A stretch of DNA of 54,888 bases from positions 1-54,888 of the forward strand of contig JAAILG010002404.1 in NCBI GenBank assembly GCA_012026655.1. The letters are read 5' to 3'. The notes beneath the pieces were generated by a model, which was not told the DNA's origin, ran no database searches, and saw nothing but the letters and a program-made list of their open reading frames with translations. The stretch is from Hydrolagus affinis. Its lineage: Eukaryota. The translations under genes and the position numbers were made by a program. Shown here piece after piece: positions 22,685-51,558 of this stretch (positions are counted from its first letter, which is position 1; each line of letters begins with the position of its first letter).

Positions 22685-22739
22685 TATATGTTAAAACAAT
22701 TGTCTTCAAGAAAATGAGTCAGAACATTTGCTTTCTTAC

Positions 22740-24952: not shown

Positions 24953-25310
24953 CACGAAGATGTGTAGAAGATGTGAAAAGCATGATTTCAAATGCAGGGA
25001 TTATTATTATTTCTTCCTTCTTTTTACCCTTTACAGACAGCGCATGTATGACTATTTTTAAAAAGGTCTGAAAATCGAGCTATTACAACCTGTACCAGTT
25101 TGAAATTACGGTATTCTAATAATTATAGAACTAACAAATTTAATATAACCTGACGTTAAAGTGACATTCACCCTGGGACTACTTTCATCTCAAATTGAAG
25201 TAACGAGCAGTTATTTATACCAAAGTTCAAAAATAATTACACTACTTGTATATTATTGAAAGGAGATTTAGAACATTGGATTTTTCCTGCACACCTTTCA
25301 TCTCTGGTAC

Positions 25311-25500
25311 CTGATATACATTGTCTGTAGGGGTTGCATTTACCGGACTCGAGTTTTGGTCGTATGGAATCTTGCTCAGTCCGTTTGGTTTGCGATCACT
25401 TTCCTGCTGATGATCAGTCGAGGGAGTCAAGATCACCTTCTGGTGGCTTACGGTTGAATCTTTTCGGGCAACTGTGTCCTTTCGATGATGGATGAGTTTC
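25311..25500 (-). CDS. NCKIPSD: NCKIPSD exon 3
   Basis: KLIHHRKDTVARK...DNVYQ; acceptor ctaacaag|, donor CAG|GTACCA; 190 nt, phase 2->0. Confidence 0.88.
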
Positions 25501-25619
25501 CTTGTTAGAAGAAAGTGTGGAGAAGGCAAATGTGATTGTCAAGACAAATACGTACTTGGCAACAAATGTATTTTAAAAAAATAAATCGGTCACTTCAATA
25601 CGTGACCTTTTGTGGCGAT

Positions 25620-30150: not shown

Positions 30151-33100
30151 TACCATACTAAGTAGCTACTATTTTTTCCCTTCTCGCAAGCCTATGTAGG
30201 ATAGCTAATCCTAAGCATTATCTTCAGACATCAACTGTGGAACATGCCAACACAAGCCTAGACATTGCATTTCCAATCAAAATTGGCTGGTAATGGTGCA
30301 GATAATTTAAACTTAAAGCACTGAAACTGTAAACACAGCTTCATATAAACAGAATACTTTCAATCCATACTATTAGCCACAGCTCATCTGCAGCTCATAA
30401 TGTGGTGAAATTCTTCAACACCTACAATTCTTCAGCTTGTTATGATGTTGAATAGTGAGGAAATTTAATTTTGCAGTTAATAGTCAACCTGGCTTTCATT
30501 TCTGACATATAAAGGCACTAATATACTATTTACACCAACGACAAGCTTTTAGAAGCATAATTGACTGAATCTGGATCACAAACGAAAGACTTTAAGAAGT
30601 GTTTGCGACTTAGGCTCAGTTCTCACAATATTGGTGTTAAAAATGAACTTTTAAAGATATTGTGCATCTACAATTTTGCCTCAACCTTACATTTTTATTA
30701 GATCTAGAACAAAAAAAAGTTGAGTTTATCAGCATTATCTGAACCCAGATATTATGAATATTCCTTGCATTTACATTGATATATACACTCAAGTTTACAC
30801 AATATTCTGTCCTACAACTGTTAATCTCAATGTCTTGCCATTGTTCTATTTAATGATTTGCAGCATTCAAATTGAATCTTACGTGAAACATTCAATCTAC
30901 GTGAAACATTAATATTTAAAACAAGTTACGACGAGAGATTTAAACTACTGTATGTAACAAGACAAGGAAATATGACAATACCAAGTCTCAACATTGTCAT
31001 GTTCGTCTTATCAGGGACACAAAGGATTAATTTAGGAATTTAAGCCCTGTATTATTTTTTGCCTGAAAATTTCAGAGTTTATTTCTTCATTTACTCAAAT
31101 TTCAGTAGGTCAAATTTTCTATTTGAATAGGATTCTTTAAATTATACAGATTAATTATATCGATTGATTATATAATTACATTTAATGCAGAAGAAATGTA
31201 AAAATGTTAATTTTTCAAATGAGCTCCTACAATATCACCGACAGCAAAATATATTTCTGAATACCAAATAAGAAGGCTTGTGTGTGTAGCTTAGGAATTT
31301 TTCACATCAAAAGCAATTCCTGCAACAAACTGGTAACACCTTTATTTTCGTTTGACCAACAGCAGCCTGTATACAATACAAAGTCACAATACAGTAAATT
31401 TCCAGATAAGCACAGCCACATACCTGATCCAAGAGTAATTCTGACCCAAGCACAGAATTCTAAATGCATCAAATCACTCCCCAATACATAGAACGCTTCT
31501 TCCAAGCATAATTTTTAAATGCACCATTATGATCCAAGCAGATTTTCTCTAATATTCCTGTTTTCATTGCTCAGCACATTGTATACTGTCAACCAATTAC
31601 CACCTAAACATAACACCACATTAGTAATTAAATGATTAGCACATTAGCACCTTCCTGAAAGAGGATTTTTTTTGTTATTTTTCACAAAAGTGAAGTATAC
31701 TGTATTGTGAAGTTCTGATAAATATTAAAGTGTTTAATGAATGGAAAGGCTGTGGTAAGAAATACTACAAATGGGTCATGCAATCTATACAAATTTTGAT
31801 ACAGTAACTTTTTGGCAAACTAGTGTTTAAGACTAACTACTTAGTTATTACAAAACAGTGAACATATTTTGCAATCAACTAAAGTTGCTTATATAAGCAA
31901 GCGGTGTCAAAACAGATATAATGGACCCATTTACTACTAAATCCAATATACAAGCCAAATAAATGGTTCCAGTAGAAAACAACATGCAACAAGATCATCC
32001 ATGAACAAATTGATATTGTTTCACAACTGGAAAAAAAGTGAAATGGGATGTACAAGTTACAAAATGATTAGAATATAAGAATTAGGAGGAGTAGGCCATT
32101 CGCCCCTCGAGCCTGCCTCGCCATTCAATATATGCTTATATGGAAAAGATGTATTTAAATAATACCAAATATATGCTACAAAAAACCAAATGCATACGGA
32201 AAAACAATAGTCAAACCCAATTTCATTCCAATTGTAAACAAAGGAGGGTACTCACATCTCGTAGACTAAAATAACAATTGACAGAATTGTTGTATAGGCT
32301 AGCAGGAATTAAATCTATATCTATATATAGCAATTGAAGACACCTGGTGAGAGCACCCTCGCTTATCCAATTATGCCAATGAATCAAGTATTTGTATTAG
32401 AGCTTAGAATATGCATACATTAAAGGAGTTGTGTTTCCAAGATAGATGTACCATTTCCAGAGCTGGCAATCTCTTTTAATTCCCCTGATCCAGAAATAGA
32501 CCCATTTAATAGAAAAATAATTTCTTCGATTTATAAATAAATCACTCTTCTGTCCACACCAGATAGTTATTTCAAAAGTGAAGAGCACATAGAGCTCAAA
32601 CAATTCCCTCTGTTATCTTTCTCCCCCAACACCAGTTCTGTATTTCCTATAGAGCACCTTCACTGCATTAGAACAAACATGCCTAAAACAGCAGCAAGCC
32701 TGCAGCCTGTAAGTTATGTCAGAATTAAAAAGACTATACAAAAAATAAACCACAACAGGCTACCCCACAGGCACTAGTGAAAAGAGTGGGTGAGGTAGGG
32801 GAGAATTATTCAGGAATTAACAGCTCCTTTAATTCTGCAGCTTGAATTCTGCTTTGCAAAGGAGATTAAAATTAGAAACAAAAAAGTTTATGAAAGAAAA
32901 AAAAAAGTAAAAATGAGGGTAACAGAGGGCTGTATTGAATTACATGGTAAATAGATTATGCTACTGAAAGCTAGTATAGTAAATGGACTTCACTGTACCA
33001 TTAACAACAAAATCACAGATCTAGTTCTAAAGAGCAAATGTAGCCCTTGCATGTGGATGTTTTGGTTCTAATATGATGCTTTTGAGATACTGGACCTGTT

Positions 33101-33930
33101 CTGCATTATTTAAAGAAAACAAAGTAACAGATGGGACAGTTTTCAGACTGATCTATACATGTAAGACAACTTGGTCATTCAGAAAATTGAAGCCTTCGTC
33201 AAAAGGTTTATTTTAAAAAAATAAATGTTACCGATACACATGACAAATGGAAACTCAGATAAAACCCCAAATCGGACCTTTCTGCACTGCATACAGAAAG
33301 CTGGGATTTGTAACTCCCTGAAATGATACACAACAGCCCTACCCCCTCCAAAAAAAATAGCTTTACATATCTCTTAAAATCACATTTACCACCATTATTT
33401 TAAAATATCGCCCGAATGGAATAATCAATATATCCATCAAATTTCACAATTTTGGAACAGTTCACAGCATTTTGTATCACTTTTTCCACCATGGAACCAA
33501 AAAATAATTTTAAACCTCAATATACCACCAGAGCATTCTTTAAAATACACATTTGTTTGAACATTGGCTTTTCAGAGAATTCAGATTTAGGATACAATTT
33601 CAGAAGCTGCTTCCTATCTACACAAGTCTTACATCCATTTCAGAAATTATAGCAGCCGATTTAGAAAGTTATTATCTAAATCTTTAATACAGAATCACAT
33701 CCAATCAGTTGATAGGAGAAACTTTTCTTTAGTCTAAGAAAGGTAAAGTGAATATCAAGGGTTTGTTTGATTAAAAAGGTACCAATGTTGCTAGTCATGG
33801 ATAACCCACCTGTACTTAAACTAATATATAAAAGTCCTGTTTTGCTAGTTCTTCATTGTATGGTAGACATGCTATGGTGTGGAAGCAATCAGCAATAAAG
33901 GAACAGTATACAGAATACTGGTAGATGCCT

Positions 33931-33936
33931 TTTATT
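33931..33936 (-). terminator. Candidate polyadenylation signal (AATAAA) of the nested gene
   Basis: AATAAA on the minus strand ~175 nt downstream of the stop; another at 33207-33212. The hexamer is common in AT-rich DNA. Confidence 0.35.
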
Positions 33937-34109
33937 TTAGGCAATGTAATGTAATGTAAGGCTAATGTAATGTAAGGCAATGTACATTTTTTTGTAATAC
34001 AATTACAAACAACGTAGCACCAGAGAATAATCACGAGTTAAAGAAATTAGATTTCCTCCCTCTTTTGTCATGCATGTCCGGAGACACCAGCAGTCAGCGC
34101 CAACCATTT

Positions 34110-34323
34110 TCATTCAGAATCGGACAAAGGATCCAGATCGGATTCCGTTGAGTCAGATTCAGTTTTGGATTCTTCCCCTCTTCTCCATTCTTTGAGGAGA
34201 AGCCTCCACTGTTCAGCTTGTAGCCAAGCAGCATACGCTGCATCTAAGTAATCCTGCGCCTCTTCAGGCTTCTCCAGACAAAGCCTCAATAATTGGTCAA
34301 GCTGGTCTGAAGTCAGACGATTC
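34110..34323 (-). CDS. Nested hAT-derived gene, last exon (TGA stop)
   Basis: Manual translation: RNRLTSDQLDQLLRLCLEKPEEAQDYLDAAYAAWLQ...ESDSTESDLDPLSDSE*; the junction completes IKNKYRNRL; 214 nt. Confidence 0.92.
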
Positions 34324-34422
34324 CTGTCAACAAAGATAAAAACAGAAAATGGAAGAACATGAGTTGCTAATAAATCAGATCAGAATCAAGTCAGGTGGCC
34401 GATTTTCAACTTAAGAATATAC

Positions 34423-34571
34423 CTGTATTTGTTTTTTATCAAGTTCACAGAGGAAAATCCCCTCTCGGGTTCAATAGTCGATGCAGACATCACCACACAA
34501 ACCTCTGATAGTATTGAGAAGTTTGGATATTCTTTTCTCCACATATCAGAGTGTGCCAGATCAATGCAAAC
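34423..34571 (-). CDS. Nested hAT-derived gene, exon 11 (hAT C-terminal dimerisation domain, catalytic Glu)
   Basis: EYPNFSILSEVCVVMSASTIEPERGFSSVNLIKNKY; ERGFS motif; ctctccag| ... AG|GTATAT; 149 nt. Confidence 0.94.
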
Positions 34572-34979
34572 CTGGAGAGGGGAGGAGGGGAAAGAAAAAA
34601 GGAAATTCACTAAGATGGCTTTTTTTCTCTCCAGAAGTACAAGTACACCTGGCAATCAGGTATAGTGAAGTTCCATTCTTATCACTGCTCCAAATTCCAA
34701 ATTACACCTTGATGCTTGGGATATGAAATACTCATAAAGGTGCATGTTATGAACCAGATTTTACAGAAATGGGAAGTAACAGAATAAAGTAACAGAAATA
34801 TAGAACTTTACGTTCTATGTATGCATTCTTCTTTTCAATATTCGGCATGATATAAAGAAAACCAATTTTGCAGATACATTTTGGTGTAATTTTAAGCAAG
34901 GGAAACTCAATAATAGAGGGAATCTATTAAAATTTTAAATTATCTTAACGTAACATCTATTTCTTGAAGTACAGCTTAC

Positions 34980-35228
34980 TTCTTCCAAACTCTCTCCTTT
35001 TCTGGTTGCAATTAGATATTTCATCTGGTCCCATTCAGCAACTAGATCCTTTCCATTGTTGGAAAGAAGGTCTGAGAAGTGATTCTGCAGTGCAGCCGCC
35101 TCGTTGTTGCCATACTGAGCCAGTTTCTCAGGGTCAGAAGGAATCCTATCAGGATCCAGAATCCGAAAAGATCTGATGATCGCATTATCAGGAAATCGCT
35201 CCTTCAGACTATCAACGATAATTCTCAC
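34980..35228 (-). CDS. Nested hAT-derived gene, exon 10
   Basis: VRIIVDSLKERFPDNAIIRSFRILDP...YGNNEAAALQNHF...AEWDQMK; the LxxRFP, LDP, YG and EW motifs are typical of ZNF862-like hAT proteins; 249 nt. Confidence 0.92.
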
Positions 35229-35659
35229 CTAATAAAAGAACCATAAGTATAAGACTTGAAACAAATATTATCAAAATTCATTTTTACCAATAATTATCAA
35301 ACAAAACTTGTGTTTTCTCAGGCATTTTTAATATTATTGAACGCAAAATGCAGTGACTGAATTTGCTTTCTAACTCTTTTATACTGATACCATACACAGC
35401 TCCCTACTCTATGGTTTTTCATCCACACAATGGATGCATGGATTGTTGTATACTAATATTATGTAACCTCCCCTCAATGAAGATGGTGCAAGTGACCCCT
35501 ATACAAGTGAGCAACTTGGGAGATGATAGGGCAGACTGAGAAAAAAAAATCCAATGTCTCCTGCTTGCTGAGCAAAATGTTGAAACAGAATTTATTTTTC
35601 AGGCCATCCAAAAACTTTCCAATAACCATTCCATATTAACTGAGCCTTGTCAATGTGAG

Positions 35660-36078
35660 CCTGCCTTAGTTGGCAGCTCTCTCACCTCAGAGTCAGAAGG
35701 TTGTGGGTTCACGCTTATAGTCTAGGTTGACACTCCAATGCAGTGCTGGGGAAGCATTGCATTGTCAGGTGCCGTGCTTCAGATGAGATGATAAACCGAG
35801 GTCCCATCTGTCTGTTCAGTGGAAGATGAATCGCATGGCACTCTTTGAAAAGAGAAGGAAATTTCTTCTGGTGTTCTGGCCAATGACCCCCACGCCTCCT
35901 CCCACACAAATAAAATTGGTCATTCGTTCATGGCTATGTGATACATAGCCTGTCAATACAGGGACAACTTGGCTATCATATTAGTCTACAAATAATAGTC
36001 AATATACTTTACAATAAATACAGTGAAGCATTTTTGACAACATGATAACCGGCTATATCAAATGAAAGAATTATTATC
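35660..36078 (+). mobile_element. Deu-domain SINE (SacSINE1-like)
   Basis: tRNA-like head GAGTCAGAAGGTTGTGGGTTCA followed by the Deu-like core TCAGATGAGATGATAAACCGAGGTCCC...CATGGCACT...CTGGCCAAT; recognised from memory of the family. More decayed copies lie at ~29490-29690 (+) and ~19880-20010 (-). Confidence 0.7.
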
Positions 36079-36239
36079 AAGTGGATGCTGCATTTCCACT
36101 AAGGTTCCATAAGGTCTGACACTGAAAAGTTATTTAATGTGATATTAAAGCATTTAGCATTAAAGCATTGTTTTAAATAATAATCATTGCATTTGATATA
36201 TCACCTCATCATTGTCAAGATGATACTTCAACAGGATAC

Positions 36240-36480
36240 ATATCACACATCTCAGAGAGGACATTATCGATTTTTATAAAGTTTAATGGGTTAGAGAAAG
36301 TAAACCTGGAATGATACTTTCCGATACGTCATGGCAAAGGTTTACGGTTATCAAGGGCAATTTAGGGAAGAATAGAAAATATTTCTTCATAAAGAGGGTT
36401 ATCATACTTCTGCATAAATATAGTCAATAGCGGTGAGAACACAGGATTCATTCAAAAAAATTATCTGAATGCTGTAAATG
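36240..36480 (+). mobile_element. Decayed CR1 3' fragment
   Basis: Degenerate LRGDIIxxYK...RKYFFxxRV coding remnants. Confidence 0.55.
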
Positions 36481-37193
36481 CAAAATGGTATGATTGGCAT
36501 TCTAAGTGACATAAAATTTGATTTATGGCTTTTCACCTAAACCTCTGGTGTCATTAGAAAAAAATTAAATGGATTTCTTGCAGAATATTAGACGAGAGGG
36601 TCAACTTCAATCATCGATCAAATCGAGGGGTATACAGAAAATTATTTCAGGACACAGAAGAGTAACTACTTCATAAAGCCTGAAATTTTGATGTTGGCAA
36701 TATTGGCCGGTGTTTGTTGAAATATACTGTGGCTTGCTGGTCACACAATGACTCAGATTCTATGGTAACACTCAATGGGGTTGGAAATCATATCCTTGCT
36801 AGTAAAATATTGTTCTTTCATATGATGTAGAACAGACGGTTATTAGGAAAGCTAGAACTGATCTTAAAAACTGTTTGCCCTGACCTCATTTATAATGGGG
36901 TATGTGAATGCCACTGGAAGACCAAGCGAAAAACTTCCAATAAACCAACGCAGCTCATGTAAGTGCCAGATTTAATTATTTTGATCTGAAGTCAGGAAGA
37001 ATGTATGACCATTGAATACTATACCAGGATGTAATAAAATATATATTAAGATTCCAAGATGTAGAACAAGGAGAACAAATCTTGCAGGTTGACCAGCGAA
37101 GCACTAAAATGAAGGTTAAATCCACGTCCTGGATTAGTATTGATTATTTTTAAATGTCTTGCTGTCATCATAGCCTTGAAAACATCTACTAAC

Positions 37194-37500
37194 CAGAGCT
37201 TTAACAGGAGCTGCTATCTCATCAGTGGCTTTTGCTGCTGTCTTATGAAGTATGGGTCCGTGCGGTTTTCTTGAAGTAGGGGGCCTAGAAAGAGCACCAC
37301 TTTCAAGCGTCTGTATTCCAAGGAGAAAGCTGCTCTCCCACAATATATTATTTCCAAGATATTTGCATTCAAGGAGGTTGATTGTTGCTTGAACCCTTTC
37401 AGGAACTCTGACGGTGTTTACAAATTTTTCGTGAAAAAATAGTGATAGATTATCCAAGTGGTGGAGAAGGTCTCTCAAGAAAAAGATGGCAAGTAGAATG
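37194..37500 (-). CDS. Nested hAT-derived gene, exon 9
   Basis: ILLAIFFLRDLLHHLDNLSLFFHEK...APVKAL (cf. FLxDILxxLxxLSxxFQ); tttacag| ... CTG|GTTAGT; 307 nt, phase 2->0. Confidence 0.85.
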
Positions 37501-38204
37501 CTGTAAAGGTTCAAAATAAAAATAATAAATACACCACAAACATATAGAACTTCTAATATTAACGACTAAATTTCAGAGCTTGCGTTTCTCATATACAAAT
37601 TATTATTTTTTTTAGAATAGGTGGGAGTGTGGAAAAGGCCCAATCAGTGTATTTTCAACCCCAAATGTCACAGAGAAGTTGGTTAACAACCTTTGTAAGT
37701 AAACCTTTACTAAAATAAAGAATAAATCCACCACCATTGTGTTAGTCACTGGTAATCCAGGGATTGCTGGCAGTTAATTGAAAGCAAATAGTTATTTAAA
37801 TTTCAGTCTATGCACTAATGGTGCTCAGTATTGAATACTTAACATGTGCACAATTAATCACACCTTTCTCCTTTCTGCTTTTGTCCATTCTCTCTTTTGC
37901 ATGAATCCCTCATTCTAACATTTGTTTTTTTTCTGCTTTCCTGGTTCCACCAAATACACATTGATTAAACTTTATGGAATATCCTGTGAGGCTTTTAACA
38001 TAGATAGTTGTCTCACAAAAGCAACTACATCAATCCTTGATTTGGAAATGAAGAAGTAAATGCAGCCGACATTTACTTGAGCAGCAAGTGACCCACAATT
38101 GCTCAAGCAAATAAACCTGCCTATGGTGCTAGATTTTAAACATAAGATCTAAAAATTACAGGTCATTAGGAAATCAACTTGAATAGAAAATTTTAATACA
38201 GTAC

Positions 38205-38426
38205 CGAGGTTGCTGAAGTTTAAGTAGGATGCTTTCTGCTGTGATGTCATGATCTACGTTACTCATATCAGCAAAATAGATTATTAAAGTTTGATAAGAT
38301 TTGCAAATTGCTTGCACTGCTATCCCCCGGTTTATCCACTTGAGGTTGCGGGCCTTCGCCAGTTTGATGGTGCTCAACTCCAGGACATTGAAGACCTCTT
38401 CCAAACCACTATGCTTAACAGTGGAT
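38205..38426 (-). CDS. Nested hAT-derived gene, exon 8
   Basis: STVKHSGLEEVFNVLELSTIKLAKARNLKWINRGIAVQAICKSYQTLIIYF...LQQP; LKW occupies the hAT TRW position; 222 nt, phase 2->2. Confidence 0.88.
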
Positions 38427-38497
38427 CTTAGTAAAAAAAACAGGAGAAAGTAATTGTCAATTTACAGTAAATTGCAATTCTGTGTAGCTGGGAAGGA

Positions 38498-38760
38498 ACT
38501 GAGTGGTGCAGCAGGTTAGAACACTTTCAGCTCTGGCTCTTAAGGCTAAAATACTGCTCCTAGAGGGGATAAAAATCTCTAATCTCAGACAGCAGATAAC
38601 TGATCCAAGTAAAATGAACCTTGAATGTCTTAGTCCATTTCACTCAACTAAAGTCCACAGAACAAAATAGCTGAATATATTAGGACTACTCTGAAGCAAA
38701 TCCACTCAGAGATGGTAGGAATTTTTTAAACTGCAGTTTTGAAATGTACGTACGAGTAGC
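38498..38760 (+). mobile_element. Decayed LF-SINE-like element
   Basis: tRNA-like head and GTAAAATGAACCTTGAATGTCTTAGTCCATTTC, resembling the LF-SINE core as recalled; heavily diverged. Confidence 0.35.
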
Positions 38761-39349
38761 TATGTAATTGCTTCGAGTGACTGGCAGAAGGCTTGACTAC
38801 TGTGTTTGGTCAGCCAGGTCTCTGACCTATGAAGAAATCCATCACCATGCTTAAGAGAGTTCCATATTTGTATACCATCTAGAATATAGAAATTTTCATG
38901 TGTCTAGAATGGAATGCCCACTCTCTCCCTGGAAGGGCACATCCTACTTACCTAATGTCAAGAGAGTATTAGGTGCAGGTTGGCAATAGCCAAGGCATGG
39001 TAATCCATGCGTGGACAATTAGGCAATGCTGGCATTTAACCAACTAAAACCATAGCTTGCCATTGTGAGTATCTGGAAAGCTTTCCGCTGCTTGTCCAAT
39101 TGGTACAACTTATCAATTAGGCCTTTATCTTGCAGAATTAACAGAAGCTGAGTGGGAAAATTCCTGGCCTCCAAGTTCAAGTGATAGGTCTGGCCTCCAA
39201 ATTCTGCCAATGAGTCCAGCTGGTTGGTTATCAGCGGTGGCCTGGAGGAATGTGGACCATTTGGCTCTGGTACCAGATGACTGAAACAGTCATAGAAGAT
39301 TGACTTGATTCCAATGAACTACAGGGAGTTCCCATTTATCTCACCCAAG

Positions 39350-40450
39350 GAGGAGAGGCACTGGATCGTTATTTGAAATCAAATAAGTGCAGGTTTAAAC
39401 CTTTACTAGGTGGATAGCGGGTACCAGTAAATTCCAACAAGCTTCCAGTTGAACAACACAGCTCTGCATGAAATACAAGAGCATCGCCACCATCTTCCTG
39501 CTCACAGCATGGACACATATCCCTACTCGTTGAATGATAGTTCCTCCAGGAGGAGGTGTGGAGATGGTCTCTCTGCATACCAATCAAGGTGGACACCAAG
39601 GTTGCCAAGTTCTTCATGTATGAACACAAGTCCATGAACTTGTATTCAAGATAATGCCTGGAAAACAGCTGTCGTCCTGAACCCGCGTTTTCTCATCAGC
39701 TATTTGATGGGCATCCATCTTCAGCGTGATGCAACAATCTTTACAAGACAGTTTGTAATGCACTAGCCACCTTCATGTTCCAAAGATCCAAACCAGACTT
39801 ACTTAGCCCCAACTATTTATTCAAAGTGCTTTTTGAGAGGCTTTGACAAATAGAACTACTTATCACGAAGCTGACAGCCTTCAGGCAGCTCAGCAACTGG
39901 TCAATGTATACCAGTGCCTTCCCACCCTGCAGCCTCATTCCCCCATTTACAAATCCACCTCACTTGTCCTAGACTTCACAAATGGGCTAAAGGAACCCTA
40001 TCTTCAGTATGCTCAGGAGCTCGGAACCATGAAGGAAAACATGTCTTATATGTCACAAGTTTAACACGCACTGGAACCTTGCTTTCCTTAACAAGGCACA
40101 AGAAAAACCAGAGTGCCCTTTTCGCTTTCTCAACACAGTCCAATAAGACAGTGTCCAACCAAACATTGGTGTCCACCACAACCCCCAGATCCCAATAAGA
40201 ATCAACAGTTAGGACTGATGCATTTCGTATCTTCCGATCAATACCTGCAACGTCCACTCTTGAGCTGCACAGTGCCTTAATATCGGACTTGGGGGCACCC
40301 ACCATCATGTCCCACTGAGTGACCCAGTGTTCAAGATGGTGAGTGTAGCACACGAGATCCCCAAGTGAGTCCGCCAACAGCACAATATCATCTGCAAACA
40401 GAAATGCCGCAATTCAGTCAGGAATGCCTGGAATAGATACACCAAGTCCA
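39350..40450 (-). mobile_element. Decayed non-LTR retrotransposon RT/C-terminus (not L2-like)
   Basis: AFLFADDIVLLADS (FADD at ~40387-40398), YWDLGVVVD (YLG motif) and C-terminal RDMCPCC; contains stops and frameshifts. Confidence 0.8.
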
Positions 40451-40540
40451 CCTGTACAGGAAGATGAACTCACGAAATAGGTGGTTTTAGGTACCTTAAG
40501 TTCCATTATAATTTCAGCATACATGTTTAGTCTATTTTAC

Positions 40541-40677
40541 CTGGAAAAGTATGAATAAATAGCTTTGAAGCATCCATCTATTTCTTCAAAAAGGGAAATG
40601 TCATTATATGCCTCTTTAATGGCTAGAGCTTCTGAGTGTACCACAAAGTGCTGCCCAAGTAGCCATGGAATATCTAC
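40541..40677 (-). CDS. Nested hAT-derived gene, exon 7 (CxxH region)
   Basis: Manual translation: VDIPWLLGQHFVVHSEALAIKEAYNDISLFEEIDGCFKAIYSYFS (cf. HCxAHRLxLA...IYxYFS); ttattacag| ... AG|GTAAAA; 137 nt. Confidence 0.9.
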
Positions 40678-41016
40678 CTGTAATAAAATGACAGCATAGA
40701 TTGATTCATATTGTACATTACAAGAACAGTTTAATGAGATACATTATATTAATGTGTTAATCCAAATTTAGTCAAAAGTTTCTGTATTATGGCATTCTAG
40801 ACACTTTTCCAGCAGTTGCCTGAGCCCAAGATATAACGGCAGATGCTAAGAAATTCCCAGAACCATTCATTAATATACTGCAATAATTATTTTAAAAATC
40901 TCTATTCTATCATTTAAATAGAAATTCCAAATAGGAACCCCATTTGGTTTAACAGACCAAAACCATTTGGTTTAACAAACCAAAATCTCTTTTAAGAGCA
41001 AACATAACTCCTTTAC

Positions 41017-41205
41017 CTTGAGCTTGAGATGAAGGCCTCCTTTTGAACCCATCATGATGGCTGATCCATTTGTTGTTATCATAGCCATAGATTGGAAACA
41101 GATCTGGTGTTCAACATAGAACTTCTTTATGGATTTGTATAGGGACATAGCATCAGCTTTACCATCCAAATACAGCAGCTTTATGAATTTTACCTGCAGT
41201 TCTGT
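41017..41205 (-). CDS. Nested hAT-derived gene, exon 6 (second Asp position = Asn)
   Basis: TELQVKFIKLLYLDGKADAMSLYKSIKKF...MITTNGSAIMMGSKGGLHLKLK aligns by eye to the consensus TDGAxxMxG; 189 nt, phase 0->0. Confidence 0.9.
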
Positions 41206-41617
41206 CTGTATACAATATATAAAACATTTTTTTTTAAACTAATGATAATCAACAACAACAACAAATTGCATTTTTTATTGCATTTTTTGGAGACAATCCA
41301 CTCCTGCTTTAACACTAAACTAGAAAAAGGTAAATAGATATAAATGTTGATAGAGAACAGAAAGCTTATACTGGTGGTAAGCCGTGCAATTGCTCTACAA
41401 TAATTTTTTTTAAAGATTTCACCTTTGGAATACAATAGTATCAGCCCTTCGAATAGCACATTAGAAGATATGAAAGTGAACACTGATCAGGATTTCAATT
41501 TAGTTATGTTTCTCAATAATCTTTAAATAGTTCACTCCTGTCAAATCTCTAGATTAGAAGCTAACATGAAGTAAGCCAGCCACAAGAGCTACTAAATATT
41601 ACAATCTGTTTGCCATA

Positions 41618-42388
41618 CAGGTGGCATGTCAAAAATCCGGCATGGTTGGGACCAAGCATCTCCCGGATTTTGGAGTTTGCTGGTACAGTAGAAGCCCGTT
41701 TATCCGTGACTCGATGCAACGGCACTTCCATATAACCGGCACGCCCCAAAAAAAGTCCCCATTCGAACTCATCCGGAACAATAACAGTGGAGCATTTGTA
41801 AATGCATAAATAATAACATAATAACAGAATATTGTATTGGTACTTATTGTTAAAACTACTCTCTTGCGCTTTTTACCTTTGCTGGTAGATGCTTCGCTGG
41901 ACTGTAAGCCTCAATCAGTAAAGGTGAGAAATGCAAAAGAGTAGTTTTAACAATAAGTACCAATATAATATTCTGTTATTATCTGTTATTACTCAGTCTG
42001 GTGTGTCTGGTGTGTGTTAAAATAACCTTTTTTTTTGTAGTGGGTTTTCAGCCGCGGTCCGCCCGAATATCCGGCAGGCGCTTTAACCAGCATTGGCCAG
42101 GTCAGGGTGCCGGATAAACGGGCTATTACTATATTTAGAAACCCGCCCTAACATTGCGTAATGTTGTTTTATTTTACACAATATAGTTTTTAAGTGTTAT
42201 TTAACGTGATTTATGTGTAAAAATATATAACAATCTAATGAAATAAGTGTTATTACTTAAAATTAAAATAAATTGTAAATTTAAATGGAATATTTTCAAA
42301 TCTTTTTTAGGGAAATCTTTGAAAAAATTTTTAGGGAGTTTTAGGGAGTTGCCGGCTTTTGGAATGCCGGATTATCGTCGTTTTACTG
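41618..42388. mobile_element. Older Tigger-like element hosting the nested MITE
   Basis: TA|CAGGTGGCATGTCAAAAATCCGGCA ... TGCCGGATTATCGTCGTTTTACTG|TA; imperfect TIRs. Confidence 0.55.
41686..42131. mobile_element. Tigger-like MITE with long internal hairpin
   Basis: TA|CAGTAGAAGCCCGTTTATCCG ... CGGATAAACGGGCTATTACTA|TA; same TIR family as the element at 20765. Confidence 0.85.
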
Positions 42389-43178
42389 TACCAAAATTAT
42401 ATTTTATTAGTTCTTGGGATTCTTAGAAGTGGTAGGACACTCCATTGCAAAACTAAAGAATATTTGTACATTTGCTTTCTCTCACCTAAATTTTGGCTAA
42501 CATCCACTGCTTGATAGCAGCATATTAATACAGTTCCGAAGATTGTACAATTATCAGCCCCTGAACTCTTGGCAGATTATCATTCTCAAAGGAAGGGATA
42601 TTAAGGCTGAGCCAAATATTGGTAACAGTTTCATTTCCTATCTATGTATATAAGTGTGTTTTCTACCTCTCCAACATTTGAATACTAAAACCATTATTAA
42701 GACAAGGAATTCTCCGATTGAGAAAGCATTCTTCAGTATCAATGATTCATATATTAAATTTGGTAGAAGTCTATCAAACCTATCAAAACATTTCAATTTT
42801 TGTAAACAATTCATAAAATTATAATCTCTACCTACTTTTCAGATATAAAACAATGACTAAATATGGGGAACATTAAAAAAAACTATATGGCATTTATCAA
42901 AATTAATATTTTGTCAGAATATTTTGTCTACTTCCTGAAAGCAATGTATACAAGCACAATGCAAGTACAGTATATGGATTCCATCCAGTTCAAATCCACT
43001 GAAGTTAAAATAATTACACAATAAAAACCATAATGTAAGGGGCAGCCAATATATATTCCGCATCTTGAAACTTACTCCCTTATTAGTTAAGTTGGTTGCA
43101 AATTCACTGAGAATTGGGCAAATAGGCCCTCTACGAAAGCCCACTCCCAGTAAAAAACCGACAAGTGGAGAACTTTAC

Positions 43179-43386
43179 CTTTGCTAGGAATTTTGTGTAC
43201 ATCAGCAGGTGCTTTTCGGTGGCAAACTCTGTACTTTCATCGACAACCAGAGAATGAACCCTGGCTTGCTTTAAAGCCCTCAAGTTTTCTGCCTCAACGG
43301 GTTCGTTAAGAGCTGCAACAAATTGCCAACTATAATTTTTGCTTCTGTGCCGTCTACCCAAAGACACACCATGGGTCTCTATTAAC
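43179..43386 (-). CDS. Nested hAT-derived gene, exon 5 (first catalytic Asp motif)
   Basis: LIETHGVSLGRRHRSKNY...HSLVVDESTEFATEKHLLMYTKFLAK; the DEST motif is typical of hAT RNase-H-like cores; 208 nt, phase 2->0. Confidence 0.92.
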
Positions 43387-43467
43387 CTATAATAAAAAAT
43401 GGTTGTGAGAAAAGCATAATGTAAACAACATGGAAGAAATTTATGTTTTAGAAGTACATTTCTTTAC

Positions 43468-43743
43468 CTGTGTAAGCTTTTAGCTTTGGAAATGGGTAAC
43501 TGTTCCTTGATTAACCAAAGAACATTTCTTAGGAGATGAACAATGTCATCTTTTGTGTCACTGCTCAGAGCATCAGTAAACAGTGCCTTCTCCCAGTTGG
43601 CTGCATTTAACGGGACAGACAGCGCCTGAAGGTGTTCCCTGCTGGCCAGGTGGCGAAGCATATAATCTTTTTTCCAACCACCTTGTGGTTCAGACCTACC
43701 GCTTGTCCACTCTGTATCAGTAATGCTATTATCAACACAGACT
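43468..43743 (-). CDS. Nested hAT-derived gene, exon 4 (rest of zinc finger)
   Basis: The junction completes CFCKVC; then WTSG...GWKKDYMLRHLASREH (HxxSxxH); attttag| ... AG|GTAAAG; 276 nt. Confidence 0.9.
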
Positions 43744-43848
43744 CTAAAATAGAACACAAACCAAAAAAAATTTGTTTCCCTTGCATAAAAATCCATAAAT
43801 AACACTGTTAATTTCAATGATTCTTGCTTGTTAAATACTGATTCTTAC

Positions 43849-44084
43849 TTGCAAAAACACTTGTTTTGTTGCTCATCATATAAGAAACAGAATAGCCGTG
43901 GATCCATTTGAAGCCATGATTTGATTCTACAATTACTTCCTCTACACCTTTTCAATGCTGCAAAATCGGAGTCGGAACTTTCCTTCAAATGACCATTAAT
44001 ACTATTGGAGTATAAATTGTCAGCCCCACCTTTGTCTTCATCTTCATCAATCTCATGGCCATTAACACATTCCTCCTCAGAATT
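43849..44084 (-). CDS. Nested hAT-derived gene, exon 3 (acidic N-terminus, start of TTF/BED-type zinc finger)
   Basis: tttctgcag|NSEEECVNGHEIDEDEDK...KSWLQMDPRLFCFLYDEQQNKCFC; donor AA|GTAAGA; 236 nt open, phase 0->2. Confidence 0.85.
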
Positions 44085-44180
44085 CTGCAGAAAAACATAG
44101 TGAAATTATACTTTAGGTGATGACTTTTAAAATGAACTCATCATTAAAACAATTTTTAAAAAATCAATCAAAAATGTTAC

Positions 44181-44250
44181 CTCGGATGATCTTGTAGTTT
44201 TATGCTGAAACAATTCTAAAATAGAGCGATGTATTGTATGTCCATCCAAA
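44181..44250 (-). CDS. Nested hAT-derived gene, exon 2
   Basis: ttttccag|T TTG GAT... gives LDGHTIHRSILELFQHKTTRSSE; donor GAG|GTAACA; 70 nt, phase 2->0; 96-nt intron to the next exon. Confidence 0.6.
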
Positions 44251-45115
44251 CTGGAAAATGTGAAACATGAAGTTAAAAATAAAATACGAAATGCTTAAAT
44301 AAAAAAATGATATTTTTAAAATGTGTTTTTATCCCTTTTGCTTCTGTGATCACCAAAAAAGGTTTTAAATCTTAACCATTTCACCTTCTAGCCCTCTCTT
44401 AATTTCTATATGGATCTCTTATATTTGGATAACTCCTTCTAACATCACCTTATAATGCTCTCTTATGGAATCAAATTTATTTTAATTAGGAAAGGTAGCA
44501 ACTTCCCAATTCAGTAACAAAAAGTCATTCTATTCTAGAGAATCTGCACAATTGTATTCACCTAAAGAATTTCGACTTATCTTTGATTTGGGTAATTTTG
44601 AAACACCAGGCTTCTCATTAACAGAGAAAGGATTGCCCCACGGCAATAATTATCAAATGACTGTACTCTAGAAACTACAAGTCACTTTATAAATTCCCCA
44701 TTTTCTCCTTACTATATATGAAACATCAAAATAAAACCAGACAAAAAAACTAGCTTGTTGTTTTTAGCTATTCACAAACTTAATTCTCCATTAGTCAATC
44801 ACACATATTCCTATACACTGACGATCAGTTTCATCACAATGGTTTCTGAGTCATTTTGCGCAGTAATATCATATGGGCCTGTATAATTTTTAAATTGTGG
44901 TTAATTAGTATTTTTGTGGATTAAAGTATTCATAGAAAGTGCCTACACTCTGCAATGCTGTGTATTTGCAGAAAGTTCAAAAACCTAAATTGTTTTGGTA
45001 CTTCAAGCTTTAAGGATCTTTCTATACCTTGACTACCCCATAACATGGTATCTTTTATTTTATTAAAAGGAATAAAAACACATTTAAATCACACTATATA
45101 TTTTTTTCCTCTTAC

Positions 45116-45150
45116 CTTTCAAAACATAACTTGCACCCTTTTAGCGTCAT
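45116..45150 (-). CDS. Nested hAT-derived gene, tentative first coding exon (MTLKGCKLCFE)
   Basis: First ATG after an in-frame stop, followed by a strong donor AAG|GTAAGA. Its phase 2 matches the next exon. A possible acceptor at 45343 would make the upstream part 5' UTR. No homology support. Confidence 0.45.
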
Positions 45151-47382
45151 AACTGCACATGAAAACCAGCTGGTCCTTCCACAGCCTTAGGGAGTTCCTC
45201 CACAGTTGCCCCATCTTGTCAACGAATATATTTGGCGGATTCTCAAATGCTTCAGCAGTCCTTTCCTCACTGCAGCTCCAAAGCTTCCTCAAGTCCCCAA
45301 TAACACCAATGGATAGAAAACTACTGACCACAGTTCCGGAGCCCTGATTGATTTAAAAAGCTGACCACACGCTTTTTTAAAAAAAATTGTAGACAGGCCA
45401 ATTTTCAGTTTCGGTGCCAGTTTGCAGGGAAAAGAACAGCAAAAGCGCATATGACTGCAAGAAAAACTCAGAAAATGCACTTGGATATTTGGTCACAGAA
45501 ATACTGCTCTAAATCTACTCTGTACATTGTGCACAAAACTTAGTTACACCACATTACTCTGAAGTGCATTTCTCCTCCACCCACTCCGCAAAGAGACAAA
45601 CGCTTGTAAAGAGACTGATAATGCATTAACTGGTGGATGGACACTTGCATCAAAACCTTAGCCAAAGATCTATTCTCAAAATCATTCAATTTTGCTATTA
45701 ATTTTTTTTTACTATTATTTTCATTTGTAGAACATTTGTGGCACATTCTAGAACAATGGCTGAATTCAAAATTACTGCAACACTCGTACAAAATTCTTTG
45801 TAAATATCCTAAAGGTTGTAACCATAACTTGCACTGATAATAAAACACCACATGCACCATAAAAGAAAGGTTAACTTTATAGTTTATTCCTCATTCTTCA
45901 AATGTCTAAATTTTCCAAAAATTGATAGTTGTTACAAGCAGCAATATGTAAGAATTGCTGATAGTGGAAAAAGGTTACCTCTAGCGCCAATAGAAGGCAG
46001 ATACTCCAGCAGTGTGTGGAGAATGATGAATGAAGATAGAAAGATTACCTACCTTTGTAGGGCTTCATTATTCTACAAGTGGCAACATTCTCCATACACC
46101 ATGAGAATACCCTTCTCCCACTGACACTAGTAGGTAACATTTGCTGAGGTCAAATATTATCTACTCACAGGAGTAGCATATTCATATGGTATATGATGGG
46201 TGGGAAGTGAAGAACTGTTTTTTCTACAGTTATTTAAATTAAATTTTAAATTTTTTTTGCTGCTATTAGGTCATAATACACTGCTTTGTTTAGTTTTGTT
46301 TCACGATATAATGTACTTCTTTACCCACTCAAATACAAAATCACAAAAGAAAAATCAAATGTTCTGTGGCATATCCACAATGATACAAATAGATTATTTA
46401 ACCAGATTATTTATACATAATATTAAGTACTAAATAAATTGAAGATTAAGATTTTAATCAAAGTGAAAACATCCAAGAATGAATTTTGTGCTTTTATACA
46501 TTAAATGCACCAAATAAATGCATCCTATATTAGGTCGCAATTATGCAGTAGCAACTTAAAACTGAATGGAAACATTGTCCATCAAAGGACGTTCAATCTA
46601 GGATGACTAAGAGCTGTCCCAGCCTACTAGTTTGCTTACTGTTTTTATAACTGGTTTAATTCAATTGATATTTACAATATATTCTTTGTTTCTATAAACG
46701 ATTTCAGCTGCCACACAATAAACAATCACCAAAAGACAATCCTGCACATGCACTATTTCAACAGAAAGCAGCAAAAAATAATATTTTTTTTATCGTACAA
46801 ACATGTACTGGTCAAACTTCCCTACCTTTCTAAATCATGGAAAAAATCAATTGGGAGAGGAATAATTTAAATTCCTGAAATATCAGAATATGGAGATAAG
46901 GAAGAATAAGACATTTACTCAATCAAAGCAAGAAAGAATGCTTTTATTATATTTTACTATTATGGCTAACAAATTTCCAAAGCCATTTTACATCATGCAA
47001 AGTACAACATTTTAGCTATGTAAAACAATGTACAGGATTTAATAGTATTTAGTATTTAAAGTCTCACCACCCAAATGTCACGTTGCTAGCTACGCATAAA
47101 TGTATAGATTTTCCAGTTTCCATGTACAGTATATCAAAGGTCTGTCCCTCTGAATATGCTAATATTCATACATCATACATCTTCCCTAATGAAGACACAC
47201 CATTCACCAATAAGTACCTTTCTAAGTTTCCGGAAATCTGAGTCTTAGATACCTAGTCTCCTTGTTTAAAAGGTGCACCAGTAGACCTTTCATCACAATA
47301 ATAACATTACACGAATTTACATTCACTTTATATTATTGGGTTATAATATGGGTGTTTTGTTCATGTAATAATGGGCCTTTTG

Positions 47383-47492
47383 CCCACAAATATACAATTA
47401 ATACACTGTATATTCTGTGAAGTGCTTTGCGGCATCTAGAAGACGTGAAAAGCGCTGTATCAAATGCAAGGATTACTTTTATTTTATTATTA
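47383..47492 (+). mobile_element. SINE 3' tail
   Basis: Same tail sequence as the other copies. Confidence 0.8.
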
Positions 47493-50400: not shown

Positions 50401-51222
50401 CAGCATGAAGCTATAGCTTCGTACTTATTTATTCTTGCGTCACAACTTGTAATTTTGCTGCTCACAAAATCAACTGTTCATACATTTGTGAAGTCAAAAG
50501 TAGTGTCACATATGGGAGAACATTTCACAGACAGCCACAGAACACAATGTTTAATAGAGAAAACATACAAAATGCTACCTAGAGACAAAATCACCCCTGA
50601 AGAATAATCAGAATCGCTCAACATTCATTCCAGGCCTTTCTTCACTCAAACGAAAGGTAAGCGCAACTCATGTCACACCTGTGGCAGTATTGAGTTAAGT
50701 ATCTTTCATATTCGTAAAAGAAGCTGCATCATGATAATATGGCAAGATACCAAGTTATGTTTAAGGTGTCCATCAAGGCACACATCTGTACAGAATCCCG
50801 TACATGTACAGGTTATCAATCAGAATATGTGAGCATATATGTTTTAGCAATTGGGTATATACTGTATATACACACTTATCAACCCTCCCCTCCCTACAAT
50901 CGTTTTGGCATGAATTACTGGGCACAAAACTGTTGTCATCGAGGCAGTAAATCCACAACAACCAGCAACCACTTAAAACAGTGGACACCTTGAACTGCGC
51001 AAGCGTGTGCAGCTTACTTCAATACACATCAATCTTAACTTACCTTCCCTCTCCTTATTTTATACGAGGAGGAGCCGGGTGCTGCTGAGGGTATTATGAT
51101 TAAACACGGTTTTTTTGTGTGTGTGCATGTGTGTGTATATGTATATTGCGTTTCCGAAGATTATGATAATAAGGCAGAGGAGGCAGGACAACAGCCAACA
51201 CCCCCCCACCCCCTACCCCCAC

Positions 51223-51387: not shown

Positions 51388-51558
51388 CTCGTCTTTCTGG
51401 ATGTAGGAAGCCGGAATGTAGCCCACTTCCCCGGTGCTGCTCTTCGAAGCCAACCACCAGTGTTGGTTACTTCGCTCCAGAATAACGAAACTCTCGCCCG
51501 CTGTGAAGTGCAGCGAGTGCGGTTCGGCCGAGTGGAAGGTGTACAGAGCCCGGTACAT
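51388..51558 (-). CDS. NCKIPSD: NCKIPSD exon 1 (start codon, SH3 domain)
   Basis: MYRALYTFHSAEPHSLHFTAGESFVILERSNQHWWLASKSSTGEVGYIPASYIQKDE has the SH3 ALY/WW/GxIPxxY motifs. Start context gccgccATG; donor GAG|GTAAGA; 171 nt, phase 0. Confidence 0.96.

What the first reader, a model, noticed from the sequence alone, without database searches (positions are those of the whole stretch)
34110..45150. Intact, intron-rich hAT-transposase-derived gene hidden inside NCKIPSD intron 1
Seen in sequence: 11 exons (44250->34110) plus one tentative start exon, all bounded by GT-AG. Every junction is phase-compatible, giving an unbroken frame of 2292 nt (~763 aa). Motifs are completed across junctions (CFCK|VC, YFSR|S, IKNKYR|NRL). 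Established knowledge: the order TTF/BED zinc finger, DEST, TDG, CxxH, TRW, RFP/LDP, ERGFS is the hAT transposase architecture found in domesticated genes such as ZNF862, C17orf113 and ZMYM/ZBED members. Inference: the frame is intact while its introns have collected old decayed SINEs, LINEs and MITEs, and I saw no terminal inverted repeats. Together these point to a long-resident host gene under purifying selection rather than a mobile copy. I know of no such gene in mammalian NCKIPSD intron 1, so it may be a lineage-specific, undescribed domestication.
Basis: partly seen in the sequence, partly recalled or inferred. Interest (0 to 1): 0.92.

Follow-up and report, generated by a model that had tools for sequence, protein, structure and literature searches.

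The report
Tamed hAT transposase gene inside NCKIPSD
A gene derived from a hAT "jumping gene" enzyme sits in a large intron of NCKIPSD; it has lost a key DNA-cutting residue but is still intact and expressed, so it is probably a transposon turned host gene, a known kind of event.

Summary
On the minus strand, 12 exons (45150 to 34110) have AG/GT borders and matching phases and sum to 2292 nt with one stop.

- **Homology:** nine exon stretches (E3-E11), and no other of 1832 open stretches in the window, match a profile of DUF4371/zf-C17orf113-type hAT transposases, in order, with E 5e-18 to 6e-6.
- **Lost catalytic residues:** the protein keeps the first Asp and the Glu of the hAT catalytic triad. 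The second Asp is Asn, CxxH is FxxH and RW is KW, so it should not cut DNA.
- **Expression:** polyA RNA reads cover exons E7-E11 and a 3'UTR of at least 1.1 kb on one strand only. Unique intron bins are near zero.
- **Copy number:** a DNA run of a related organism carries the locus at flat single-copy depth. No flanking inverted repeats were found.
- **Orthologues:** no close orthologue or named protein was found; the best identity was 41% or less over most of an exon.

Not shown: splice-junction reads, dN/dS, the true first exon, or that the introns arose after capture, since some relatives seem to share intron positions. Verdict: a new member of a known kind, a likely domesticated hAT transposase. 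The spliced product was never joined or searched whole.

The parts
45116..45150 (-). E0, tentative start exon (ATG at 45150-45148, donor GT at 45115)
   Evidence: Sequence only. No homology and no reads were laid here.
44181..44250 (-). E1, 70-nt exon that links E0 to E2 in frame
   Evidence: AG/GT borders and phase. No homology and no reads were laid here.
43849..44084 (-). E2: acidic/Ser-rich N-terminal part and the first Cys of the zinc finger. No in-frame ATG before 43907-43905.
   Evidence: hhalign places it at the right spot of the family but not significantly (E 0.42).
43468..43743 (-). E3: second Cys and both His of the zinc finger, plus the start of the DUF4371-like region
   Evidence: Profile positions 57-148, E 2.9e-15. 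Alignment A2.
43179..43386 (-). E4: holds the first catalytic Asp (VVDEST)
   Evidence: Profile positions 162-234, E 4.9e-18.
41017..41205 (-). E5: has Asn where the family has the second catalytic Asp (TTNGSA against TSDGA). An alternative in-frame acceptor lies at 41193.
   Evidence: Profile positions 226-290, E 4.7e-15. Family invariant D289 aligns with Hermes D248.
40541..40677 (-). E6: the CxxH motif reads FVVH
   Evidence: Profile positions 288-335, E 4.4e-10.
38205..38426 (-). E7: the RW motif reads KW
   Evidence: Profile positions 332-414, E 1.4e-15. RNA depth 3.47 in bin 38200-38399.
37194..37500 (-). E8: helical insertion-domain part and a variable linker
   Evidence: Profile positions 403-482, E 2.2e-8. 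RNA depth 5.36 in bin 37200-37399.
34980..35228 (-). E9
   Evidence: Profile positions 504-578, E 2.3e-16. RNA depth 6.76 in bin 35000-35199.
34423..34571 (-). E10: first half of the hAT dimerisation region, with the catalytic Glu kept (PERGFS)
   Evidence: Profile positions 588-643, E 8.4e-12. Pfam Dimer_Tnp_hAT is only sub-threshold (E 0.076). RNA depth 6.3.
34110..34323 (-). E11: second half of the dimerisation region, an acidic tail, and the TGA stop at 34112-34110
   Evidence: Profile positions 635-689, E 6.2e-6. RNA depth 3.8-8.4.
33000..34109 (-). 3'UTR, at least this long (reads run over the 33000 end of the laid stretch)
   Evidence: Continuous one-strand RNA depth of 2.2-8.4 in all six bins.
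51388..51558 (-). NCKIPSD exon 1 (SH3 domain; ends in phase 0)
   Evidence: Best PDB match is NCK-interacting protein with SH3 domain, residues 1-55, E 2.3e-19. Sequence.
25245..25538 (-). Open stretch holding the next NCKIPSD exon that could be identified (residues 93-164)
   Evidence: PDB 9i2b_H, E 5.7e-5. A further exon at 23372-22722 matches residues 210-364.
35600..36400 (.). High-copy repeats inside intron E8-E9 (another block lies at 38800-39000 in intron E6-E7)
   Evidence: Depth in the hundreds to thousands in all three contig runs.
39979..40413 (-). Probable LINE reverse-transcriptase fragment in intron E6-E7
   Evidence: Pfam RVT_1, E 0.0041, 17.3 bits, below the 29.6 cut-off.
41818..41982 (.). 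165-nt palindromic (MITE-like) element in intron E4-E5
   Evidence: 77-nt arms, 87% complementary, 11 nt apart.

Best explanation
A hAT transposon of the DUF4371 / zf-C17orf113 type inserted, in the same orientation, into the large intron after NCKIPSD exon 1. It lost its ends and its ability to cut DNA and has been kept as a single-copy, spliced, polyadenylated gene.

It carries Asn in place of the second catalytic Asp, Phe for the Cys of CxxH and Lys for the Arg of RW.

Most likely it acts as a non-catalytic, oligomerising, sequence-specific DNA-binding protein, that is a regulator, as other tamed transposases do.

Shown: gene structure, homology, the residue changes, exon-limited expression, and single copy at 95% identity or more. 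Inferred: selection, DNA binding and the regulatory role.
For: - **Structure and frame:**
- **Homology:** 9 of 1832 open stretches match the family profile, collinearly. Each junction from E2|E3 to E10|E11 restores the family's residue spacing without gaps where the family is alignable.
- **Family identity:** the family profile hits Hermes transposase at E 5e-11. It aligns its invariant D289, C318/H321, R382/W383 and E634 with Hermes D248, C265/H268, R318/W319 and E572. D180, D248, R318, W319 and E572 are named as essential in PMC6027215 (passage read).
- **Residues here:** D, N, K, W, E. In all, 6 of the 21 family-invariant columns are changed.
- **The Asn is unusual:** of the 120 listed relatives of the E5 region, 74 matched my motif pattern and all 74 have Asp.
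- **RNA:** in run X21, nine unique all-intron bins have depth 0-0.16, bins that are largely exon or 3'UTR have 2.1-8.4, and bins that only clip an exon edge have 0.27-0.61. All reads are on one strand.
- **DNA:** run X1 shows depth 40-60 across all unique sequence. Two contigs of 3614 and 3185 nt span the exons. All 10 gap letters in 33000-35708 are non-coding.
- **No flanking inverted repeats**.
- **Intactness:** substitutions alone would leave the frame open with P about 0.005 after 5% neutral divergence.
Against: - No single exon reaches a Pfam threshold.
- Splice joints of the RNA run were not among the 15 of 111 joints displayed, so splicing rests on depth only.
- dN/dS was not obtained. 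Only 40 of 95 differences were displayed. Three of those fall in coding exons, 2 synonymous and 1 Ile to Arg.
- No orthologue was found in any database, so conservation beyond organisms about 1.2-1.6% apart is unknown.
- E0, E1 and E2 lack homology support.
- The time since insertion is unknown. Some intronic repeats are 95-99% like many other copies, so they may be young.
- One unrelated invertebrate relative (P0121) also has Asn at the second Asp position.
Confidence: 0.65

Rival explanations
1. The transposase exons are alternative 3' exons of NCKIPSD itself. Exon 1 (SH3 domain) would splice to E2, giving an SH3-transposase fusion (transposase capture), and E0 and E1 would not be the real start.
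For: - NCKIPSD exon 1 ends in phase 0 at 51388, and E2 starts in phase 0 at 44084 on the same strand.
- E2 has no ATG before the zinc-finger region except 43907-43905, and its open frame is closed 21 nt upstream of the acceptor.
- GC is only 0.33-0.34 across 44-50 kb, against 0.46-0.48 at the NCKIPSD 5' end, so no obvious separate CpG-rich promoter exists.
- Capture by alternative splicing is the usual birth route of such genes (bioRxiv 10.1101/2020.05.07.082677, passages read).
Against: - No reads were laid on 39000-51600, so there is no direct evidence.
- E0 and E1 give an in-frame ATG with good splice sites.
- Exon 1 spliced to E1 runs into a stop (read off the E1 sequence).
Confidence: 0.2
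2. It is a dead but not yet decayed transposon copy with no function of its own. Its inherited introns are still spliced because it is transcribed as part of the NCKIPSD pre-mRNA or from a leftover promoter.
For: - Relatives elsewhere seem to share intron positions, and active multi-exon hAT elements exist (PMC3942097).
- At 2% neutral divergence the frame would stay open with P about 0.12.
- Selection was not measured.
Against: - Six of 21 family-invariant residues are changed while 757 whole codons stay open.
- No other copy at 95% identity or more was seen in DNA run X1, where depth stays flat and the contigs are unbroken.
- There are no inverted repeats.
- Several introns have since taken up other repeats.
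- The zinc-finger ligands and the dimerisation motif are kept.
Confidence: 0.13
3. It is an autonomous, still mobile hAT element.
For: The reading frame is full-length and intact.
Against: - The second catalytic Asp is Asn, CxxH is FxxH and RW is KW.
- There are no flanking inverted repeats.
- Depth is single-copy.
- The span is 11 kb with repeat-filled introns, against 2.5-5 kb for hAT elements (PMC3942097).
Confidence: 0.02

Closest known systems
DUF4371 / zf-C17orf113-type hAT transposases of invertebrates (P0044 family). One member is named 'zinc finger protein 862-like [Dysidea avara]' by NCBI.
   Same: Collinear over profile positions 57-689. It has the same zinc finger, DESxD, ERGFS and dimerisation motifs and the same acidic tail. 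Identity is 24-48% per exon in the best BLASTP match to P0044.
   Different: - The relatives are single uninterrupted ORFs, for example 738 aa on a 2759-nt contig. They keep D, CxxH and RW.
- The window gene has 9 introns inside the homologous part and has lost those residues.
Hermes transposase of Musca domestica (PDB 4D1Q, 2BW3, 6DWW)
   Same: Same superfamily. The family profile hits it at E 5e-11 through the dimerisation region, and the weaker core alignment lines up the key residues.
   Different: Hermes is an active enzyme with D180, D248, R318, W319 and E572 (PMC6027215). Here the equivalents are D, N, K, W and E.
BuT2, a Tip-group hAT transposon of Drosophila
   Same: It has a DUF4371 plus a hAT dimerisation domain, and its transposase gene is split into five exons (PMC3942097).
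   Different: BuT2 is about 3 kb with 12-bp inverted repeats, 8-bp duplications and short introns, and it is thought to be mobile.
Captured transposases such as KRABINER, SETMAR and PGBD3-CSB
   Same: A transposon in a host-gene intron, on the same strand, used through splice sites (10.1101/2020.05.07.082677).
   Different: - Fusion to NCKIPSD exon 1 is not shown here.
- That survey covers tetrapods, and its main text has no mention of NCKIPSD or SH3 (0 occurrences). Its supplementary tables were not seen.
Human C17orf113, ZNF862 and KIAA1586 (hAT-derived host genes; their origin and map position are recalled, not tested)
   Same: Pfam's zf-C17orf113 and DUF4371 models match the relatives' family just below cut-off (28 against 29.5 bits and 27.8 against 32.1 bits).
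   Different: None of the 13 hits of the exhaustive E3 search carried a name. Ten of them were looked up for names and eleven were read as sequences. All those read are fragments or unnamed transposase-like ORFs. Orthology is therefore not supported.

Membership tests
hAT transposase superfamily (by descent) | C-terminal hAT dimerisation region (Pfam PF05699) with the SxERxFS motif | tested here: met
   E10 and E11 match family profile positions 588-643 and 635-689 (E 8.4e-12 and 6.2e-6). That family hits PF05699 at 31.6 bits and Hermes at E 5e-11. Pfam directly on the E10 stretch is sub-threshold (E 0.076), because the domain is split by an intron.
hAT transposase superfamily (by descent) | RNase-H-like core collinear with known hAT transposases | tested here: met
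   E3-E9 match profile positions 57-578 in order.
hAT transposase superfamily (by descent) | N-terminal zinc finger (CxxC...HxxxxxH, zf-C17orf113-like) | tested here: inconclusive
   The second Cys and both His align with the family. The first Cys lies in E2, which has no significant match. Neither half gives a Pfam hit. A whole-domain score would need the joined sequence, and that step was left out.
Active (catalytic) hAT transposase | Five key residues D180, D248, R318, W319 and E572 (Hermes numbering; PMC6027215) | tested here: not met
   The equivalents are D, N, K, W and E. CxxH is also FxxH.
Mobile hAT element | Short terminal inverted repeats, 8-bp target duplications, and multiple copies | tested here: not met
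   Across 32000-47500, the only inverted pairs that bridge the gene are AT-rich, 21-30 nt and 71-87% matched. DNA depth is flat at 40-60 with unbroken contigs. Copies below 95% identity could not be looked for.
Domesticated transposase gene | Intact frame although immobile and no longer catalytic | tested here: met
   2292 nt, 757 whole codons and no internal stop.
Domesticated transposase gene | Transcribed and spliced | tested here: inconclusive
   Exon-limited, one-strand polyA RNA depth over E7-E11 and the 3'UTR.
Domesticated transposase gene | Orthologues at the same locus in other species with dN/dS below 1 | tested here: inconclusive
   The locus is present in organism A at about 1.2-1.6% divergence. 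In 33000-35708, 27 of the contig's 32 substitutions were displayed: 1 in 612 coding nt (synonymous) and 26 in 2097 non-coding nt. All 10 gap letters are non-coding. The 5 hidden substitutions could change this.
Host-transposase fusion gene | Transposase exons spliced to host-gene exons in one frame | not tested
   Only phase compatibility of NCKIPSD exon 1 with E2 was checked.
Orthologue of a described vertebrate gene (C17orf113, ZNF862 or similar) | Close sequence match to the named protein | tested here: not met
   The exhaustive HMMER search of E3 against 1.84 billion representatives gave 13 hits, none at E 1e-10 or better, with 41% identity or less over most of the exon (53% over a 28-residue stretch). 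No hit carried a name: ten were looked up for names and eleven read as sequences. The E5-region search gave at most 46% identity.

The most novel reading that the evidence does not exclude
The locus may be a young-to-middle-aged case of transposase capture by a cytoskeletal adaptor gene. NCKIPSD exon 1 (SH3 domain) would splice in frame to E2. That would give an SH3-zinc-finger-hAT fusion protein alongside normal NCKIPSD, a host domain not reported among captured transposases. The donor would be a hAT lineage otherwise seen here only in invertebrates.
Probability: 0.2. Interest if true: 0.7.

Novelty: new member of a known kind. Interest (0 to 1): 0.5.

Why it matters
Tamed transposases are a recurrent source of new DNA-binding regulators. 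This one can be caught in an informative state.
- It is still full length, but it has a clear catalytic knock-out (D to N), together with changes in the CxxH and RW motifs.
- It is nested in a host gene on the same strand.
- It has an unusually split structure, with 9 introns in the transposase part.

It offers a test of two questions. Are such introns inherited from the transposon or gained later? Does capture by an SH3 adaptor gene occur? If orthologues exist in related fishes, it would add a lineage-specific gene that current protein collections appear to lack.

Tried and rejected
- **Pfam on ten exon stretches:** nothing above threshold.
- **PDB search with E10 alone:** 0 hits.
- **hhalign of E2 against the family:** right place, but E 0.42.
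- **Orthologue hunt:** the E3 search of the representatives, the search with an alignment of the E5 region and the atlas look-up of E9 (nearest clusters mollusc, arthropod and rotifer hypothetical proteins) gave only distant relatives.
- **Source names:** The listing of cluster members gave no names or organisms.
- **Runs X13 and X17 (organism D):** they matched only the intronic repeats, not the gene, so they say nothing on conservation or expression.
- **Earlier-findings look-ups:** by sequence and by words they added nothing beyond two notes on this same stretch and one note on another hAT relic.
- **Papers:** 'NCKIPSD'+'transposase' gave 2 papers, both irrelevant by their listings. 'C17orf113' gave 1 irrelevant paper. 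'DUF4371'+'hAT' gave 8 papers, of which BuT2 was read in passages. So I found no description in print with these three searches. Supplementary tables, for example Table S3 of 10.1101/2020.05.07.082677, were not seen and might list related fusions.
- **Readings rejected:** an active element (lost catalytic residues, no inverted repeats); an orthologue of C17orf113 or ZNF862 (no close hit); the inverted pair 44297-44339 / 45065-45107 as a MITE with target duplication (AT-rich, 77% matched, flanks not duplicated).
- the spliced product was never joined. Whole-protein Pfam, a full-length homologue search and structure prediction were therefore not done.

Full report
**What is there**

I re-derived each border from the sequence and checked them by script. 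Every internal exon is preceded by AG and followed by GT. The phases chain, the lengths sum to 2292 nt, and the only in-frame stop is TGA at 34112-34110. Intron lengths are 865, 96, 105, 81, 1973, 339, 2114, 704, 1965, 408 and 99 nt. E5 has a second in-frame acceptor 12 nt further on (41193). The family alignment favours 41205.

**Is it more than chance, and what is it**

Pfam on ten exon-bearing open stretches gave nothing above threshold. The best was Dimer_Tnp_hAT at E 0.076 on the E10 stretch.

An exhaustive HMMER search of exon E3 (91 aa) against 1.84 billion representatives gave 13 hits at E 0.001 or better, and none at 1e-10 or better. The best was 2.4e-6. Identity was 30-41% over most of the exon, and 53% only over a 28-residue stretch of a repetitive protein.

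One hit (P0010) led to a family with precomputed DUF4371, zf-C17orf113 and Dimer_Tnp_hAT domains. One member is named 'zinc finger protein 862-like [Dysidea avara]' by NCBI.

I built a profile of 16 mostly full-length members (A1) and searched it against all 1832 six-frame open stretches of the window.
- It hit exactly nine, all on the minus strand, in family order and nearly end to end (profile 57 to 689), with E 4.9e-18 to 6.2e-6. The next best was E 3.6.
- BLASTP exon by exon against P0044 gave the same collinear picture, E3 to E11 against residues 78 to 705 of 707. E5 gave no listed match to P0044 and was placed through P0019 and P0030.
- Where the family can be aligned across a junction (E2|E3, E3|E4, E5|E6, E6|E7, E7|E8, E9|E10, E10|E11), the spliced reading restores the family's residue spacing with no gap. 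This is independent support for the splice sites.
- E0, E1 and E2 have no significant match.

**Catalytic state**

Profile A1 hits Hermes transposase (4D1Q, 2BW3, 6DWW, 8EDG) at E 5e-11 to 3e-9. Its core alignment puts the family's invariant D289, C318/H321, R382/W383 and E634 on Hermes D248, C265/H268, R318/W319 and E572. I obtained that numbering by counting along the printed chain with an offset of 76. PMC6027215 names D180, D248, R318, W319 and E572 as the five residues essential for function (one passage read).

The window gene has D (VVDEST), N (TTNGSA), K and W (LKW) and E (PERGFS), and FVVH for CxxH. In all, 6 of the 21 invariant columns of A1 are changed: D226E, D289N, A291S, C318F, R382K and S385N. 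Of the 120 listed relatives of the E5 region, 74 matched my motif pattern and all 74 have Asp, while 46 did not match the pattern. One of those 46, a mussel protein (P0121), has Asn.

**Expression**

One sequencing-run search gave no indexed RNA holder, but it did give raw-read polyA single-cell RNA runs of 'organism B'. I laid run X21 on 33000-38999, with two runs of organism D and one DNA run of organism A.

X21 gave 170 reads, all with the first mate on the + strand in unique sequence, which points to a minus-strand RNA.
- The nine all-intron, non-repeat bins have depth 0 to 0.16. These are 34600-34799, 35400-35599, 36400-36999, 37600-38199 and 38600-38799.
- Bins with exon sequence have depth roughly in proportion to their exon share. 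Examples are 5.36 in 37200-37399, 2.41 in 37400-37599 (half exon) and 0.61 in 38400-38599 (27 nt of exon).
- The 3'UTR bins 33000-34109 have 2.2 to 8.4, and 20 reads run over the ends of the stretch.

This is what a spliced mRNA gives and what intronic pre-mRNA of NCKIPSD would not give. The weak point is that only 15 of 111 joints were displayed, all in repeats. 

**Copy number and conservation**

DNA run X1 (organism A) covers the 6 kb with two contigs of 3614 and 3185 nt. Depth is 40-60 in all unique bins, exons and flanks alike. The repeats at 35600-36400 and 38800-39000 reach the thousands. So no second copy at 95% identity or more is seen there.

X1 differs from the window by 32 substitutions in 2709 nt and by 50 in 3200 nt.
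- In 33000-35708, 27 of the 32 substitutions are displayed: 10 in the 3'UTR, 16 in introns and 1 in coding sequence (35181, synonymous).
- All 10 gap letters there are non-coding.
- In the other contig only 12 of 50 are displayed. Two are coding: 37386 is synonymous and 38322 is Ile to Arg at a variable column. The RNA reads show both as well.

This leans towards constraint, but the 5 hidden substitutions could undo it. It is not a dN/dS.

Runs X13 and X17 (organism D) matched only the repeats. A 'fish gut metagenome' run holds 0.38 of the words, the only hint of the host's kind.

**Mobility marks**

Across 32000-47500 there is no convincing inverted pair around the gene. An 11-kb span is far beyond the 2.5-5 kb of hAT elements (PMC3942097).

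Several introns carry other elements:
- a 165-nt palindrome;
- a sub-threshold reverse-transcriptase stretch;
- two high-copy repeat blocks.

**Host gene**

The region 51558-51388 encodes residues 1-55 of NCKIPSD (E 2.3e-19, against 1.4e-10 for the next SH3 protein). The stretch 25538-25245 matches residues 93-164, and 23372-22722 matches residues 210-364. Further likely exons lie downstream (by eye).

The transposase gene thus lies inside NCKIPSD, on the same strand, after exon 1. A small exon for residues about 58-92 was not located, so 'intron 1' is probable but not shown.

**How long resident?**

Against this:
- The intronless relatives are single ORFs, for example 738 aa on a 2759-nt contig.
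- However, several database fragments break off exactly at our exon borders. P0006 and P0011 stop where the E3 stretch stops. P0006, P0001 and P0003 lose homology at the E2|E3 point. P0104 reads on as 'VK' after the residue that ends our E5.
- BuT2 is a five-exon DUF4371-bearing hAT transposon.

So the short introns (81-105 nt) may be inherited, and the long ones may be swollen by later insertions.

The case for selection therefore rests on something else. Six family invariants are replaced while 757 whole codons stay open. By my count, substitutions alone leave the frame open with P 0.12 at 2%, 0.005 at 5% and 2e-5 at 10% neutral divergence. Indels and splice sites are not counted. This is inference, and it assumes that the ancestor had the family's invariants.

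**The start**

E2's frame is closed 21 nt upstream of its acceptor, and its first Met (43907-43905) lies inside the zinc-finger region. The product therefore needs an upstream exon. There are two candidates.
- NCKIPSD exon 1. Its phase-0 end fits E2's phase-0 start, as note s1-906341 proposed.

I checked only the phases.

**Comparison and verdict**

The gene works like other tamed hAT transposases. By descent it is a member of the hAT superfamily. It fails the test for an active transposase and the test for a mobile element. It is not a close orthologue of any protein in the collections searched. Three paper searches found no description, and supplements were closed.

I rate it a new member of a known kind, real and well preserved, of moderate interest. 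The fusion reading is the boldest one not excluded.

The spliced product was never assembled. All searches were exon by exon, and the joined step (whole-protein Pfam, full-length homologue search, fold prediction) was left out.

Noticed in passing
window 43467-43844 and 40975-41238, against P0006, P0011, P0001, P0003 and P0104: ORF fragments of distant relatives (about 30% identity, unnamed ENA and Logan contigs) end or lose homology exactly at this gene's E2|E3, E3|E4 and E5|E6 borders. This suggests an intron-bearing sub-lineage of this hAT family, or very distant orthologues.
   Followed up: partly
window 51388 and 44084: NCKIPSD exon 1 ends in phase 0 and transposase exon E2 begins in phase 0. 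Exon 1 spliced to E1 would hit a stop, but exon 1 spliced to E2 stays in frame.
   Followed up: partly
window 25245-25538, 22722-23372 and further minus-strand stretches down to about 4200: Downstream NCKIPSD exons are in the window (residues 93-164 and 210-364 were confirmed against PDB). The exon for residues about 58-92 was not found.
   Followed up: partly
window 35600-36400 and 38800-39000: Very high-copy repeats, with depth up to 8875. Organisms A, B and D share them at 95-99% identity. They are the only parts of the laid stretch that organism D holds.
   Followed up: no
window 10445-10500 (-), 24881-24947 (-) and 5265-5330 (+): Three tRNA-like Rfam hits at or just above the gathering score. 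They are probably tRNA-derived SINE heads. The second lies next to the 100-N gap at 24651-24750.
   Followed up: no
window 41818-41982: A near-perfect 165-nt palindrome (77-nt arms, 87% complementary) in intron E4-E5. It looks like a MITE.
   Followed up: no
window 38322 and 37386: At both coding positions the window differs from the DNA run of organism A and from all RNA reads of organism B. The first is Ile against Arg and the second is synonymous. The window carries the minority or derived allele.
   Followed up: no
run X12 (organism C): This run holds 0.20 of the sampled words of 34110-44100. It may be a more diverged relative that carries the locus.
   Followed up: no
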